Shown one piece after another: positions 713 through 6,700 of a stretch of 6,814 nt of DNA. The DNA comes from Octopus sinensis (Eukaryota). Every line of letters starts with the position of its first letter. Position 1 is the stretch's first letter. The position numbers were made by a program, and so were the translations under genes. Location of the stretch: positions 1-6,814 of the forward strand of contig NW_021829218.1 in NCBI RefSeq assembly GCF_006345805.1, given 5' to 3'. Under the pieces are notes generated by a model. The model was given only the letters and a program-made list of their open reading frames with translations. It was not told the origin of the DNA and searched no databases.

Positions 713-1172
713 GCACACATCCATCCATAATCCATATATATGTATACATTCACATATATATGTATAGATTTATATGTATATGCACACAGATACGCACACA
801 CACACGCATACACACGCACACACCCACATACTCCCACGCGCACATACATACACATATGTTGTTGAGTGAGCCCCCGTGTTCCTGCTCGGCCTGTTGGTAC
901 AGAACCGATGAGGTCTTTTCTATCTTTAGGTTCTCTCCAATGTTCATTTACTCCAATGTCCATTTACTCGCTCTCCTATGCACGCCGAGCAGGAACACGG
1001 GAGCTCACTCAATAATATATGTGTATGTATGTGCGCGTGGGTGTATGTTGGTATGTGTGTATGTATGCGTGTGTGTGTACGTGTCTGTGTGCATATACAT
1101 ATAAATCTATACATATATATATACATATATGTGAATGTATACATATATATGGATTATGGATGATGTGTGCAT
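711..1172. repeat. Long inverted repeat (foldback): arms 711-890 and 984-1172, 93-bp spacer; arms run outward into TACA/TGTA tracts to about 591 and 1230
   Basis: The reverse complement of 984-1172 aligns by eye to 711-890 through non-periodic segments: ATGCACACATC, TCCATAATCCATATATATGTATACATTCAC, TAGATTTATATGTATATGCACACAGA, CCCACGCGCACATACATACAC, GAGTGAGC(C/T)CCCGTGTTCCTGCTCGGC. Confidence 0.93.
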
Positions 1173-1392: not shown

Positions 1393-1765
1393 CAAAAGAG
1401 GATCCCCATAAACTGGTTACAATATAAACAAAACTGAAAACATAATAAAATACTCAGATAAATAAACAAATGGAAGTACATAACTATATATATTGAAAAA
1501 ACAATTAACTAAATACAACCAACAAAAAAATAATAATAAGTAGGTATAAACACATAAACAAAATAAACAAAAATAAATTACACGAACGTATATAAACAGG
1601 AGATACAAATATTACTGGCACTTCCCCCCACACACACTAACTAAACATAGACGCACATAGAGATATACGCATGCGCAAATGAAGATACATACATAGGAAT
1701 ACAAAATAAAAAATGGCTGACCGTTAGTAAGGAGAGACACACAAATAAGAAAGAAGAAAGCAAAG

Positions 1766-1809
1766 GACCACTGATGAGGTCACAGAAGTGTGACGAAAGA
1801 ACTCTGGTC
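1766..1809 (+). ncRNA. Minimal type I hammerhead ribozyme
   Basis: Stem I GACCA (1766-1770)/TGGTC (1805-1809); CUGAUGA 1771-1777 plus one extra G; stem II GTCACA-gaag-TGTGAC (1779-1794); GAAA 1795-1798; vestigial stem III A-G-AA-C-U; cleavage triplet CUC, with scission after 1804. Confidence 0.9.
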
Positions 1810-2229: not shown

Positions 2230-2477
2230 AGTTGAAGTATATGTTCAAAGTGTTCGATGCAGTGGCCCACGGTGGCGATACGTATTCAATACAAAAAGCA
2301 GATCAAAGTGGTGGAAAGCGGTCATACAGAAGATTGATGTTTCCGAAAGAGCGAGGAATTCATTTTTACCTTAAGCAATTGTGATGACCCATGGTGGAAG
2401 TTCGCTGGGTGGTTCTAGTGATTTTTTGTGAATGCTTGGCTTTATAATGCCTGTTAGGTGGTCAATCTAGCGTAGCG

Positions 2478-2809
2478 TGACGTCATCATGTTTTGACCAA
2501 TCGTTTCGTTAGTGGCTTTAATCAAGTGGAACGGGACGTCATCATTATTTTGACCAATCGCTGCATTATAACTCCCTCTTGTTTGTTCCTGTCTTGACCA
2601 GTCGCTTCGTTAGTCAAGCATAGCGGAGATGATCCAGATTCTGCCCAATCACGACTTATAGCTACATTAGATCTGCCCCCTGTCTGTACTTGTTAGGTGA
2701 CTATTCAAGCAGAAAAGGACGTCATCAATATTCTGACTAATGACTGTCCCCTGTTTGTATCCTGTCCATTCTAGCAGAGCTAGACGTCATCAACTTGTTG
2801 ACCAATCAG
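2478..2809. promoter_or_regulatory. Degenerate tandem array of GACGTCATCA-N5-6-TGACCAATC (CRE/ATF-like plus CCAAT box) in the PLE-B 3' region
   Basis: GACGTCATCA at 2479, 2535, 2718 and 2783, each followed by TGACCAATC (2494, 2551, 2799) or TGACTAATG (2734); further partial copies near 2594 and 2645. The repeat is directly visible; regulatory function is inferred. Confidence 0.55.
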
Positions 2810-2975
2810 AATCGGGTCTGACCCTTAGCTGTATCGTATGTATCAGGGTCAGATTTGCACGAAAGAATTTTTTTCCCTTTTTTACTAAGGCATATTTCCG
2901 TCAGAGTGAATGTCTGTTTGAAGTAGCGGCCGTGGTGAAATTTGGTTCTCCTTTTCGGAGGACTTATCTTTTGTT

Positions 2976-3420
2976 TTAGTATTCCTGGCCCAGGGTGTTT
3001 AAACTTGGTCTAAATTTTTTTATGAAATATAGTTCTTATTTTGGCGTTGTGTGAGGTTGCGTTGTCACTGAATTTATAGAGCGGGTTAGTTGTAAATTTC
3101 GGATTTACATTTCCAGCACATATATCTATGGTCCGCTGACCGGTATTTTGCGGTAATCAGGTTTTCTAATTTGTGATTTATGCACCGCCATCCTGTTTAC
3201 GTAAGCTATTTTTTGTATGGCCTATATACTGCCTATTGCAGCCTGCGCATGTTATGACGTAAATTAAGTTTTCTGATGCGCAGGTGAAGTTTGTTCTAAT
3301 GGTGAACTGGTGGCCTTGTTCCAGTATAAATTCTGATCCTTCTTTCAAGATGACACAGATTCCGCAGTTGGCCTTCCACATTTTCTAACTGCTGGTTTTT
3401 GTGGTTGATGTGAGTGCAGT
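2976..3420 (-). pseudogene. Frameshifted GIY-YIG endonuclease of a Penelope-like element with Cys-rich linker (Neptune-like)
   Basis: Joining frames gives PAVRKCGRP/NCGICVIL...FTIRTNFTCASENLIYVITCAGCNRQYIGHTKNSLRK/RMAVHKSQIRKPDYRKIPVSG/IDICAGNVNPKFTTNPLYKFSDNATSQRQNKN/YFIKKFRPSLNTLGQEY* (stop at 2978-2976). LIY..YIG motifs, CxxC pairs and terminal PSLN are present; at least 4 frameshifts. Confidence 0.92.
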
Positions 3421-3439
3421 GTATATATATATATATATA

Positions 3440-3576
3440 CTTTATTTAAAGCAGTAGAAAATTCAACAACAAAACCTGTTGAATTTTCTGCTGCTTTAAA
3501 TAAAGCATATTACTCTACCACTGGTATTTGAGTACTCTTTTTTCCACTTTGTTTCACATTTATGTGTTTACTCCGG
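3440..3576. mobile_element. Short non-autonomous repeat with a 29-bp stem hairpin, embedded in (TA)n
   Basis: CTTTATTTAAAGCAGTAGAAAATTCAACA (3440-3468) pairs with 3477-3505 (28 Watson-Crick pairs plus one G.U), 8-nt loop; (TA)n on both sides (3422-3439, 3577-3594). Confidence 0.6.
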
Positions 3577-4176: not shown

Positions 4177-4233
<57 letters not shown>

Positions 4234-4250
4234 AATTAATAAATAAAACA
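3956..4250. repeat. (TA)n tracts (about 3956-4005 and 4177-4231) with intervening AT-rich low-complexity sequence
   Basis: Direct reading. Confidence 0.9.
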
Positions 4251-4251
4251 T

Positions 4252-4778
4252 ATGCATATTTACATACATATATGTACGTACCTACCTCTACATGTATATA
4301 TACATGCATATATGGGTACAGGACACCAAAAAAACGTCAAACACAATGAGAAACGAAAACATAAACACAAAACCAAGGAAATGAACATTTTTCGTAAACA
4401 ACGAAAAAATAGAGTACAGGACATACAAAACAAGGAAAATTCCCCTTCTTCAGCCGCCTTTGTTTCATCTACTCCACGTTTCGAAGGTCAAGGCGATACA
4501 TGACTTTAATGAAACTTTCCTTCCCGCGAAAATCAAATTAAATAAAATTTGAGATTTTTTTGCGGAGGGGTAAAAATGGTAACAAAAAGAGGACAGTAAC
4601 GACAGTACAAAATACAAACAGTAAAAGACAGGACAAGGAGAATAACAGTAACACAAACAAGAATGGCTGTTAAGCCGAACGAGATAAAATTTTTTACGAA
4701 CGCTACTTTTTGAGAACGGCGAGGGAGCAACAGATGTACCGTCCTCTACTAGAAGATAGCCAGAGAAGAAAGACAGTA

Positions 4779-4780
<2 letters not shown>
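4252..4780 (-). mobile_element. Putative non-autonomous, ribozyme-bearing (retrozyme-like) interspersed repeat; left boundary approximate (4252-4313)
   Basis: Non-coding, flanked by TA microsatellites, contains several hairpins and a hammerhead core. It resembles an abundant cephalopod repeat from memory (not verified). Confidence 0.55.
4442..4503 (-). ncRNA. Candidate non-circularly permuted (pseudoknotted) hammerhead ribozyme
   Basis: Minus strand: UCAUGU-A|UCGCCUU-GAC-CUUC-GAAACGUGG-N13-AAGGCGG-CUGAAGA-A-GGGG. Stem III 6 bp (4503-4498 with 4479-4474), GUA triplet, stem I 7 bp (4496-4490 with 4460-4454), stem II 4 bp (4486-4483 with 4445-4442). All three helices abut the conserved core exactly. 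Confidence 0.7.
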
Positions 4781-5780: not shown

Positions 5781-6242
5781 GGATCTTTTCGGTTTGAACG
5801 GCAGTTTTTAACATAATTTCTAGGTAACTAAAAAATTAAAAACTTCGTATACTGGTAGAATGTGTTTATAAAACATATTTTTCTCTTGGCTTTATTGAGA
5901 AAATTCTATAGTTTGTAAGATATTTGTTGTTTTTTTTTCTTCAATTTCTACAATTTCAACCAATCGATGACGTCTATTGAGTTAAAAATCATTCTGTGCC
6001 GTATGAATATGTCCCTCGTTTAAGAAACAGATTGGGTTTATTTACATTTGTGAAGAAAAAAAAGATACCCTTCCCCCCACCCCTAACCCTATCTCTAACC
6101 CTAACCCTAACCCTAACTAACCCTAACCAACCCTAACCCTAAAACAGATTGAAATGCAATAGATCGATACTAGGGTCATAATTATGGGTGACAATTTCAT
6201 ATGACACCGCTAGAAAAACTGCCGTTCAAACCGAAAAGATCC
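5781..6242. mobile_element. 462-bp non-autonomous TIR DNA transposon (MITE), probably Merlin superfamily
   Basis: Perfect 29-bp TIRs GGATCTTTTCGGTTTGAACGGCAGTTTTT (5781-5809) / AAAAACTGCCGTTCAAACCGAAAAGATCC (6214-6242); 8-bp TSD AATAAAAC (5773-5780) / AATAGAAC (6243-6250), 7/8 match. 5'-GG termini with an 8-bp TSD fit Merlin better than hAT (the superfamily call is inference). Confidence 0.88.
6081..6142 (+). repeat. Interstitial telomere-like (CCCTAA)n tract inside the MITE
   Basis: 11 units, 7 of them perfect CCCTAA, plus CCCTAT, CTCTAA, CTAA and CCAA variants. Confidence 0.95.
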
Positions 6243-6700
6243 AATAGAACTACTGTGCAGTTATTGTTATACTGCTGGTGTTTCCTTTTTATGAAAGTGA
6301 TATAAAAGTGATTTTGTCTCTAAAAGATCATTTTTCAGGATGTAAAATACATTTTGCGAAGACTTTGTTGCATGATCATCTTTCAGGTGATCTACAACTT
6401 TTTCTAAATCATTTTTGTAAACACTAAAATAATTACTGTCTCTGGTATATCGCAGAAAATATTTTTAGTTAATTGTTTTATCAGGAGATAAATCCAGCTG
6501 TTTCATGGCTGCCGCGTATTCTCTTCATTTTTCGATTTGATTTGTAGATTATTAAATATTCGCCTAGTTCACATTTAATGGCGAGATTTTTAACCTTGGC
6601 GTCGAATTTTCTGGATTTCTTTGTCTAGAACTTCATTCTATTTCCTCACATCTTTCCTTAATCCAAGCATCTTTTGCCTGCCTTTCTTCTTCTATTCGTT
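6243..6700 (-). mobile_element. Decayed RTE-clade LINE, linker and RT N-terminal part (continuation across the MITE)
   Basis: Minus-strand fragments RQAKDAWIKERCEEIE (6683-6636), AAAMKQL (about 6516-6496) and SCNKVFAKCIL (about 6375-6343), collinear with the 4851-5780 piece. Confidence 0.72.

What the first reader, a model, noticed from the sequence alone, without database searches (positions are those of the whole stretch)
4442..4503. Hammerhead ribozyme with non-circularly permuted strand order on the minus strand
Seen in sequence: a hammerhead junction is built from three strands, A (stem III-UH-stem I), B (stem I-CUGANGA-stem II) and C (stem II-GAAA-stem III). Types I, II and III are all rotations of A-B-C. 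Here the minus strand reads A-C-B. Strand A is UCAUGU-A|UCGCCUU (4503-4490), followed by a 3-nt linker. Strand C is CUUC-GAAACGUGG (4486-4474), followed by a 13-nt linker. Strand B is AAGGCGG-CUGAAGA-A-GGGG (4460-4442). Stem III (6 bp, starting A15.1-U16.1 then C-G), stem I (7 bp) and stem II (4 bp, G10.1-C11.1) each start exactly at the core. All five non-Watson-Crick pairs are G.U on this strand and would be A.C on the other strand. Established: stems I and II lie side by side in folded hammerheads, so a short link between their distal ends is geometrically reasonable. Standard hammerhead models would miss this order. As I recall, natural non-circular hammerhead permutations have been reported by the Weinberg group; I cannot tell whether this family was included. 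Inference: an active or recently active self-cleaving RNA, cutting between 4497 and 4496. Stem II is weak in this copy.
Basis: partly seen in the sequence, partly recalled or inferred. Interest (0 to 1): 0.92.

Follow-up and report, generated by a model that had tools for sequence, protein, structure and literature searches.

The report
Orphan permuted hammerhead look-alike, probably chance
The minus strand really does spell a hammerhead ribozyme in the rearranged block order published in 2023 as "type SGC", but it is a single copy with weak, G.U-rich stems and no relatives, so it is most likely a chance look-alike in animal non-coding DNA.

Summary
The letters and coordinates are right. Minus strand 4503-4442 reads S block (UCAUGUA|UCGCCUU), GAC, G block (CUUC-GAAA-CGUGG), a 13-nt linker, then C block (AAGGCGG-CUGAAGA-A-GGGG). 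One detail is overstated: stem II starts one unpaired A after the core.

The order is not new. It is the "type SGC" hammerhead of Eckert et al. 2023 (583 examples, metatranscriptome RNA only). The candidate shares their 3-nt stem I/II linker, an extra base after A9 and a possible fourth helix.

No independent evidence supports function:
- No relatives were found in any reachable collection, so covariation is untestable.
- 5 of 17 pairs are G.U (29%), matching chance matches (27%) rather than the validated ribozymes (0-1 per 15-17).
- Stem II has no net stability, and a 12-bp competitor (-11.6 kcal/mol) covers two of its four G's.
- A model built from three validated SGC ribozymes scores the candidate below zero, and Rfam finds nothing.

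A match this good is rare per window (about 1e-3 loose, about 1e-5 strict). It is still expected from below one to over a hundred times per gigabase, depending on strictness.

Verdict: most likely a fortuitous match (about 0.78). A genuine ribozyme is about 0.07. One in vitro cleavage assay would settle it.

The parts
4490..4503 (-). Block S: stem III 3' strand UCAUGU (4503-4498), H17 = A4497, proposed scissile bond between 4497 and 4496, stem I 5' strand UCGCCUU (4496-4490)
4487..4489 (-). 3-nt linker GAC joining the distal ends of stem I and stem II, the same length as in validated SGC-1/2/3
4474..4486 (-). Block G: stem II 3' strand CUUC, G12 A13 A14 A15.1, stem III 5' strand (A)CGUGG
4461..4473 (-). 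13-nt linker AGUAGAUGAAACA. Its 3' part (4468-4461) could form a fourth helix with 4432-4425, or alternatively pair with 4515-4508.
4442..4460 (-). Block C: stem I 3' strand AAGGCGG, core CUGAAGA, one unpaired A (4446), stem II 5' strand GGGG
4425..4432 (-). Possible helix IV 3' strand UGUUUUGU: 8 bp (5 A-U, 1 C-G, 2 G.U) with 4468-4461, 9 nt after stem II. An equal or better helix arises in about 10% of shuffles.
4511..4522 (-). Upstream strand AAGGAAAGUUUC of a 12-bp competing helix with 4443-4432 (-11.6 kcal/mol) that takes two of the four stem II G's

Best explanation
This is a fortuitous match. Ordinary AT-rich, cryptically simple non-coding DNA of an animal genome happens to place CUGAAGA, GAAA and UA so that three G.U-tolerant helices abut them in the S-G-C order. 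It has no biological self-cleaving role. At most it might show weak cleavage in vitro, as any sequence meeting the minimal hammerhead rules can.
For: (1) It is an orphan. There is no second copy in the window. No match turned up in IMG/VR or GTDB genomes. The seven metagenome hits are unrelated GC-rich sequences, about the number I estimated from pattern length and assumed collection size. ORFs across the region are not in the 15-billion-protein collection and have no homologues. (2) 5 of 17 pairs are G.U (29%). Chance matches in 325 Mb of null sequence average 27%. The validated SGC-1/2/3 have 0-1 G.U in 15-17 pairs (sequences). (3) Helix energies, duplex initiation included: stem II 0.0 kcal/mol against -2.1 to -7.1 in SGC-1/2/3, and helix IV -3.4 against -6.5 to -13.3. 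(4) Competing folds: a 12-bp helix 4522-4511/4443-4432 at -11.6 kcal/mol and a local hairpin take the stem II G's. Forcing stem II costs 13.5 kcal/mol relative to the minimum-energy fold, and forcing helix IV costs 11. Folding z-scores are -0.17 and -1.1. (5) The stretch holds 27 G.U-tolerant helices of 6 bp or more in 131 nt, no more than shuffles. (6) The window has only 2 CUGANGA sites on both strands; about 2.5 are expected from base composition by my own arithmetic. (7) Matches of this quality are expected from below one to over a hundred times per gigabase. (8) There is no Rfam hit, and a model of validated SGC ribozymes scores it below zero. (9) Known type-SGC ribozymes come from metatranscriptome RNA, with a hairpin ribozyme on the other strand. 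Eckert et al. also searched all of RefSeq and kept only candidates with covariation.
Against: The match is rare per window (about 1e-3 loose, about 1e-5 strict). It reproduces three non-obvious traits of validated type-SGC ribozymes: the 3-nt linker, an extra base after A9, and a possible fourth helix next to the stem I 3' strand. Every core nucleotide is intact, including C15.2-G16.2 and G10.1-C11.1. The genome clearly hosts hammerhead-bearing retroelements: a Penelope-type minimal hammerhead lies 2.7 kb away. The candidate also sits in a 550-bp segment bracketed by (TA)n, which looks like an insertion. The collections I could search hold little eukaryotic DNA, so the absence of relatives is weak evidence.
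Confidence: 0.78

Rival explanations
1. A genuine type-SGC (non-circularly permuted) hammerhead ribozyme encoded in an animal genome. The minus-strand transcript folds into stems I-III, helped by the 3-nt linker and a fourth helix. It cleaves itself between A4497 and U4496, perhaps to process the RNA of a small retroelement inserted in a (TA)n microsatellite.
For: The core is complete and all three stems abut it in the S-G-C order. It has the 3-nt linker, an extra base after A9 and a 4-bp stem II as in validated SGC-3. An 8-bp helix IV is possible. The per-window chance is about 1e-3 to 1e-5. A Penelope-type minimal hammerhead and a Penelope-like endonuclease fragment lie in the same window. 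The segment 4231-4779 is bracketed by (TA)n, a preferred Penelope-like element target. Craig et al. 2021 note Naiad elements with hammerhead core halves that fit no descriptor. The orphan GCS-1 candidate of Eckert et al. did cleave in vitro.
Against: There are no copies and no covariation. The G.U fraction is typical of chance matches. Stem II has zero net stability and is outcompeted by 11-13 kcal/mol. Helix IV is A-U/G.U-rich, 9 nt away from stem II rather than 1-3 nt, and expected by chance in 10% of shuffles. The validated-SGC model gives a negative score. The segment shows no similarity to the Penelope-like loci fetched or to the hammerhead at 1765-1808. All known type-SGC examples are RNA-only.
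Confidence: 0.07
2. A decayed or rearranged remnant of a hammerhead-bearing retroelement (Penelope-like element or retrozyme). It would derive from a once-functional ribozyme but be inactive in this copy.
For: Penelope-like debris is present: a frameshifted GIY-YIG endonuclease fragment at about 2966-3407 on the minus strand, 62% identical to P0001 with E = 1e-49. A minimal hammerhead lies at 1765-1808. (TA)n repeats flank the segment. G.U pairs are what C-to-U and A-to-G decay of Watson-Crick stems would leave.
Against: There is no sequence similarity between 4300-4780 and the min-HHR segment, the endonuclease fragment or loci L008-L010. Neutral decay should leave as many A.C mismatches as G.U pairs. 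No known retroelement family carries the S-G-C order.
Confidence: 0.08
3. Another small RNA, such as a C/D-box snoRNA, with CUGA as the D box and AGAUGA as a C-like box.
For: There is a weak Rfam match to plasmodium_snoR30 at 4446-4514 on the minus strand (16.8 bits against a gathering score of 43, E = 3.3).
Against: The score is far below threshold. The box-like motifs are only about 12 nt apart. There is no terminal stem and no RUGAUGA at a 5' end.
Confidence: 0.01

Closest known systems
Type-SGC hammerhead ribozymes (HRIMA-1 motif and type-SGC variants; Eckert, Friedrich, Weinberg and Weinberg, Nucleic Acids Res 2023, PMC10085705)
   Same: Identical block order S-G-C. All hammerhead core nucleotides are present. 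It has a 3-nt linker between the distal ends of stems I and II and one unpaired base between A9 and G10.1. Stem lengths are similar (I 5-6, II 4-5, III 5-7 bp there; 7, 4, 6 here). A helix that closes the C block is possible.
   Different: The known ones are multi-copy (583 sequences) and show R-scape covariation. They come from metatranscriptome RNA (soil, spruce, sludge), with a hairpin ribozyme on the opposite strand. Their stems are almost all Watson-Crick, and helix IV is 6-8 bp, stable and 1-3 nt from stem II. Here there is a single copy in eukaryotic genomic DNA, 29% G.U pairs, a stem II with no net stability, a weak helix IV 9 nt away and no sequence similarity (the covariance model scores it below zero).
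GCS-1 of Caballeronia peredens (same paper)
   Same: A single orphan sequence that meets a permuted-hammerhead descriptor without any covariation support.
   Different: GCS-1 has a different order (G-C-S) and all-Watson-Crick stems in a bacterial intergenic region. It was shown to cleave partially in vitro, yet its authors still call its biological relevance unclear.
Minimal type I hammerheads of Penelope-like elements (Cervera and de la Pena, Mol Biol Evol 2014, PMC4209133)
   Same: The genomic setting matches: animal DNA with Penelope-like debris and microsatellites. [quoted passage not shown] A bona fide example lies in this window at 1765-1808 on the plus strand.
   Different: Those have the circular order C-G-S (type I), a 6-8-bp hairpin stem II and a minimal helix III that works in dimers. 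The candidate has a different order and no sequence similarity to them.

Membership tests
Type-SGC hammerhead ribozyme | Blocks in 5'-3' order S (cleavage site), G (GAAA), C (CUGANGA), each uninterrupted | tested here: met
   definition
Type-SGC hammerhead ribozyme | Invariant core: C3 U4 G5 A6 N7 G8 A9, G12 A13 A14, A15.1-U16.1, H17 not G | tested here: met
   CUGAAGA, GAAA and U-A|U are present
Type-SGC hammerhead ribozyme | Stems I, II and III abut the core and are stable enough to form | tested here: inconclusive
   Pairing is possible for all three. Energies are I -8.5, III -3.5 and II 0.0 kcal/mol. Forcing stem II costs 13.5 kcal/mol against the minimum-energy fold.
Type-SGC hammerhead ribozyme | Short linker, typically 3 nt, between stem I and stem II | tested here: met
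   GAC at 4489-4487
Type-SGC hammerhead ribozyme | Fourth helix joining the other sides of stems I and II, required for cleavage of SGC-3 | tested here: inconclusive
   An 8-bp A-U/G.U helix 4468-4461/4432-4425 at -3.4 kcal/mol lies 9 nt from stem II. One at least as long arises in 10-11% of shuffles. It also competes with 4515-4508/4469-4462 at -6.3 kcal/mol.
Type-SGC hammerhead ribozyme | Covariation of stems across homologues | not testable with these tools
   No homologue was found in any reachable collection.
Type-SGC hammerhead ribozyme | Similarity to validated members (covariance model of SGC-1/2/3) | tested here: not met
   Model R1 gives no hit in the whole window and only negative-score fragments on the 101-nt slice. 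Caveat: the model rests on 3 sequences and cannot encode stems I and II.
Type-SGC hammerhead ribozyme | Site-specific self-cleavage abolished by a core G5 mutation | not testable with these tools
   This needs a bench assay.
Type-SGC hammerhead ribozyme | Usual context: RNA-only (metatranscriptome) replicon with a hairpin ribozyme on the other strand | tested here: not met
   The window looks like eukaryotic genomic DNA, with microsatellites, (CCCTAA)n and Penelope-like debris. Rfam finds no hairpin ribozyme. Context as.
Classical hammerhead types I-III (Rfam RF00163, RF02276, RF00008 and related) | Circular order of blocks and a match to the Rfam models | tested here: not met
   There is no hammerhead hit at E up to 10, and the order is non-circular.

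The most novel reading that the evidence does not exclude
The motif is a working type-SGC hammerhead encoded in the DNA of an animal genome. That would be the first outside environmental RNA replicons. It could belong to a small retroelement that targets (TA)n, and it would hint that hammerhead-less Penelope-like lineages carry permuted ribozymes that standard descriptors miss.
Probability: 0.06. Interest if true: 0.75.

Novelty: not a real feature. Interest (0 to 1): 0.2.

Why it matters
If it were real, it would extend non-circularly permuted ribozymes from uncultured RNA replicons to a eukaryotic chromosome. It would also suggest that descriptor searches of retroelement families reported as lacking canonical hammerheads should be redone with all six block orders. 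As it stands, it mainly shows that the minimal hammerhead rules carry little information. With G.U pairs and six block orders allowed, a gigabase genome can be expected to hold such look-alikes by chance, so covariation or a cleavage assay is indispensable.

Tried and rejected
- **Rfam:** scans of the whole window and of small slices gave no hammerhead, only microsatellite-driven miRNA noise and sub-threshold snoRNA-like hits.
- **Copies in the window:** none. The 34-nt pair 4458-4491/5066-5099 (71%) looks like chance.
- **DNA pattern searches:** IMG/VR gave 0. JGI metagenomes gave 7 loci of 4 distinct sequences, all unrelated and GC-rich, so chance. GTDB genomes gave 0.
- **Protein route to relatives:** exact look-up of ten window ORFs found none in the collection. 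A homology search with the minus-frame ORF 4468-4779 found nothing. A full HMMER search with the minus frame 4263-4487 found 0 hits.
- **Homology to other parts of the window:** the candidate segment shows only A-rich low-complexity matches to the min-HHR segment and no match to the Penelope-like loci L008-L010.
- **Naiad-type 3' end idea:** the endonuclease fragment turned out to be a canonical C-terminal-EN Penelope-like element whose relative L009 carries a canonical type I hammerhead. I found nothing linking 4231-4779 to it. The supplement of Craig et al. is not held.
- **snoRNA reading:** rejected, with scores far below threshold.
- **CpG content:** no informative signal.
- **Printed type-SGC alignments:** held only as images, so I rebuilt SGC-1/2/3 from the oligo table instead.

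Full report
**1. What is there**

- UCAUGU-A|UCGCCUU
- GAC
- CUUC-GAAA-CGUGG
- AGUAGAUGAAACA
- AAGGCGG-CUGAAGA-A-GGGG

All hammerhead core positions are present: C3 U4 G5 A6 A7 G8 A9, G12 A13 A14, A15.1-U16.1, C15.2-G16.2, G10.1-C11.1 and H17 = A. Stem I has 7 pairs (U1.1.G2.1 is a wobble). Stem II has 4 pairs (G-C, G.U, G.U, G-C). Stem III has 6 pairs (2 G.U).

One detail is overstated. Stem II does not start exactly at the core, because an unpaired A (4446) separates A9 from G10.1. My own descriptor, which tries all six block orders on both strands, finds this as the only good hit in the window, in order S-G-C.

**2. The order is already published**

Eckert, Friedrich, Weinberg and Weinberg (Nucleic Acids Res 2023, PMC10085705) define blocks S, G and C and describe natural, experimentally validated "type SGC" hammerheads.

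The paper reports these features:
- A linker of typically three nucleotides between stems I and II.
- A fourth helix joining the other sides of stems I and II, which is required for cleavage (mutants M8 and M9).
- 583 sequences with R-scape covariation.
- Occurrence in metatranscriptome RNA (soil, spruce, sludge), with a hairpin ribozyme on the opposite strand.

I rebuilt SGC-1, SGC-2 and SGC-3 from the oligonucleotide table. All three have a 3-nt linker, an extra U between A9 and G10.1, and stems of I 5-6, II 4-5 and III 5-7 bp. Their helix IV is 6-8 bp and lies 0 nt from the stem I strand and 1-3 nt from the stem II strand. The candidate shares the 3-nt linker, the extra base and the stem sizes. 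That resemblance is the strongest point in its favour.

A literature search found no report of type SGC in a eukaryotic genome.

**3. Is it more than chance?**

- Dinucleotide shuffles of the window give about 5e-4 matches with 17 or more contiguous pairs.
- In 325 Mb of first-order Markov sequence, such matches occur at 0.17 per Mb for all six orders and 0.028 per Mb for SGC.
- They fall to about 0.003-0.006 per Mb when G10.1-C11.1 is also required.
- My analytic estimate from the base composition gives about 0.2 per Gb for a compact SGC match of exactly this quality.

The match is therefore unusual for one 6.8-kb window (about 1e-3 to 1e-5). Across a gigabase genome it is expected from below one to over a hundred times, depending on how strictly it is defined. 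I do not know how much sequence the first stage read.

A decoy test used 539 same-composition permutations of the core motifs on the real window. It gave 2 hits in 3.7 Mb-equivalents, both inside this same stretch. The 131 nt around the candidate contain 27 G.U-tolerant helices of 6 bp or more, no more than shuffles (25.6 +/- 4.7). The stems themselves are cheap; only their position next to the core motifs is rare. The window has two CUGANGA sites in all, against about 2.5 expected from composition by my arithmetic.

**4. Quality of the fold**

Five of 17 pairs are G.U (29%). That is the mean of chance matches in the null (27%). The validated ribozymes have 0-1 G.U in 15-17 pairs.

Helix energies in kcal/mol, with the duplex-initiation term included:

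| Helix | Candidate | SGC-1/2/3 |
|---|---|---|
| I | -8.5 | -1.2 to -2.9 |
| II | 0.0 | -2.1 to -7.1 |
| III | -3.5 | -2.9 to -7.1 |
| IV | -3.4 | -6.5 to -13.3 |

Helix IV is an 8-bp A-U/G.U helix (4468-4461 with 4432-4425), 9 nt after stem II. A helix at least as long arises in 10-11% of shuffles of the tail.

Minimum-energy folds keep stem I but take the stem II G's. They go either into a local hairpin or into a long-range helix whose 12-bp core, 4522-4511 with 4443-4432 (-11.6 kcal/mol), covers two of the four. Forcing stem II costs 13.5 kcal/mol relative to the minimum-energy fold. Forcing helix IV costs 11. Stems I and III cost 1 or less. Folding z-scores are unremarkable (-0.17 and -1.1). 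Pseudoknot energies could not be computed, so this is indicative rather than decisive.

**5. Homology tests**

Rfam 15 gives no hammerhead match, even at E up to 10 on a 146-nt slice. I built a covariance model from SGC-1/2/3 with stems III and IV as pairs. It does not find the candidate in the window and gives only negative-score fragments on a 101-nt slice. The model is narrow: it rests on three sequences and cannot encode stems I and II. It shows only that there is no similarity beyond the universal core.

**6. Relatives**

None could be found, so the decisive test (covariation) could not be run.
- Exact or gapped DNA patterns gave 0 in IMG/VR and 0 in GTDB genomes.
- JGI metagenomes gave seven loci of four distinct, unrelated GC-rich sequences, about the number I expected by chance.
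- Ten window ORFs are absent from the 15-billion-protein collection.
- Two conceptual translations across the region have no homologues.

These collections hold little eukaryotic DNA, so the absence is weak evidence.

**7. Surroundings**

The window looks like animal genomic DNA. It is 33% G+C, with many TA, TG and ATAC microsatellites and a (CCCTAA)n tract.

On the minus strand at about 2966-3407 there is a frameshifted GIY-YIG endonuclease fragment of a canonical Penelope-like element with a C-terminal endonuclease. After joining its frames it is 62% identical to P0001 (E = 1e-49), a protein from a metagenome contig, as are P0002 and P0003. One relative, L009, carries a canonical type I hammerhead upstream of the fragment.

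On the plus strand at 1765-1808 there is a type I hammerhead that Rfam misses:

GGACCA-CUGAUGA-G-GUCACA-GAAG-UGUGAC-GAAA-G-AA-C-UC|UGGUC

It matches the Penelope "min-HHR" architecture of Cervera and de la Pena 2014: helix II 6 bp, helix I 5 bp, an unpaired base at the 5' end of stem II and a minimal helix III.

The candidate lies in a 550-bp segment (4231-4779) bracketed by (TA)n tracts, which is a preferred target of such elements. However, the segment shows no similarity to the min-HHR segment, the endonuclease fragment or the fetched loci.

**8. Weighing**

For a real ribozyme:
- The core is complete.
- It shares three architectural traits with validated type-SGC ribozymes.
- The per-window chance is low.
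- The genome hosts hammerhead-bearing retroelements.

Against:
- It is an orphan.
- Its G.U content is that of chance matches.
- Stem II has no net stability and faces a strong competitor.
- Helix IV is weak and displaced.
- It has no similarity to known members.
- All known type-SGC ribozymes are RNA-only, and the RefSeq-wide search by the family's discoverers kept none from eukaryotic genomes.

I estimate about 0.78 for a fortuitous match. A genuine ribozyme is about 0.07, and an inactive remnant of a retroelement hammerhead about 0.08. The orphan GCS-1 of the same paper cleaved partly in vitro. Some in vitro activity here would therefore not be astonishing, and would not by itself prove a biological role.

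**9. Verdict**

The topology is known (type SGC). The best reading is a chance look-alike, and a one-template cleavage assay plus a genome-wide copy search would settle it.

Noticed in passing
window 1765-1808 (+): A canonical-order (type I) minimal hammerhead that Rfam misses: GGACCA-CUGAUGA-G-GUCACA-GAAG-UGUGAC-GAAA-G-AA-C-UC|UGGUC. It has helix I 5 bp, helix II 6 bp with an unpaired G at its 5' end, and helix III 2 bp plus a 2-nt loop. It fits the Penelope-like-element 'min-HHR' of Cervera and de la Pena 2014. Fold z-score is -2.25 (no Rfam hit). It sits in a segment (about 1232-1977) flanked by microsatellites.
   Followed up: partly
window about 2966-3407 (-): A degenerate, frameshifted GIY-YIG endonuclease domain with a CxxC/CCHH motif. 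It comes from a canonical (C-terminal EN) Penelope-like element that is 5'-truncated next to a (TA)n tract at 3421-3440. After joining the frames it is 62% identical to P0001 (E = 1e-49); the hits are ENA metagenome contigs, one from a Tara sample.
   Followed up: partly
L009:2-35 (+): A relative of that Penelope-like fragment carries a canonical type I hammerhead about 100 nt upstream of the EN ORF: CUGAUGA-GUCU-UCAAU-AGAC-GAAA-CGCGCG-UUUC, with a palindromic helix III.
   Followed up: no
window 4710-4779 (-): This is the best window hit of the model built from validated SGC-1/2/3 (15.2 bits, E about 0.02, rough calibration). It shows CUACUGUC (8/8 identical to the SGC-1 S block), a 6-bp helix CUACUG/UAGUAG and ACAUCUG (7/7). 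It has no GAAA and reads CUGUUGC in place of CUGAUGA, so it has no catalytic core. It lies at the 5' end of the same (TA)n-bracketed segment as the candidate and is probably chance.
   Followed up: no
window 744-893 and 981-1130; wider 570-1232: A large near-perfect inverted repeat (150-nt arms, 90% complementary, 87-nt spacer). It is embedded in mirrored (ATAC)n / (TATG)n microsatellites, so it is a foldback-like palindrome.
   Followed up: no
window 2463-2811 (+): Four copies of a roughly 45-nt unit containing GACGTCATCA (CRE-like half site) followed about 7 nt later by TTGACCAATC (CCAAT-like). Start-to-start spacings are 56, 183 and 65 nt. The copies lie just downstream (minus strand) of the Penelope-like EN fragment (family D11).
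   Followed up: no
window 3433-3510: A perfect-looking hairpin or inverted repeat (TTTATTTAAAGCAGTAGAAAATTCAACA...TGTTGAATTTTCTGCTGCTTTAAATAAA) next to a (TA)n tract. It draws sub-threshold plant and animal miRNA-model hits in Rfam and looks like a MITE-like or foldback element.
   Followed up: no
window 6077-6142 (+): An interstitial telomere-like tract (CCCTAA)n of about 11 imperfect units, preceded by a C-rich run. A long CTTT / poly-T tract lies at 6682-6814.
   Followed up: no
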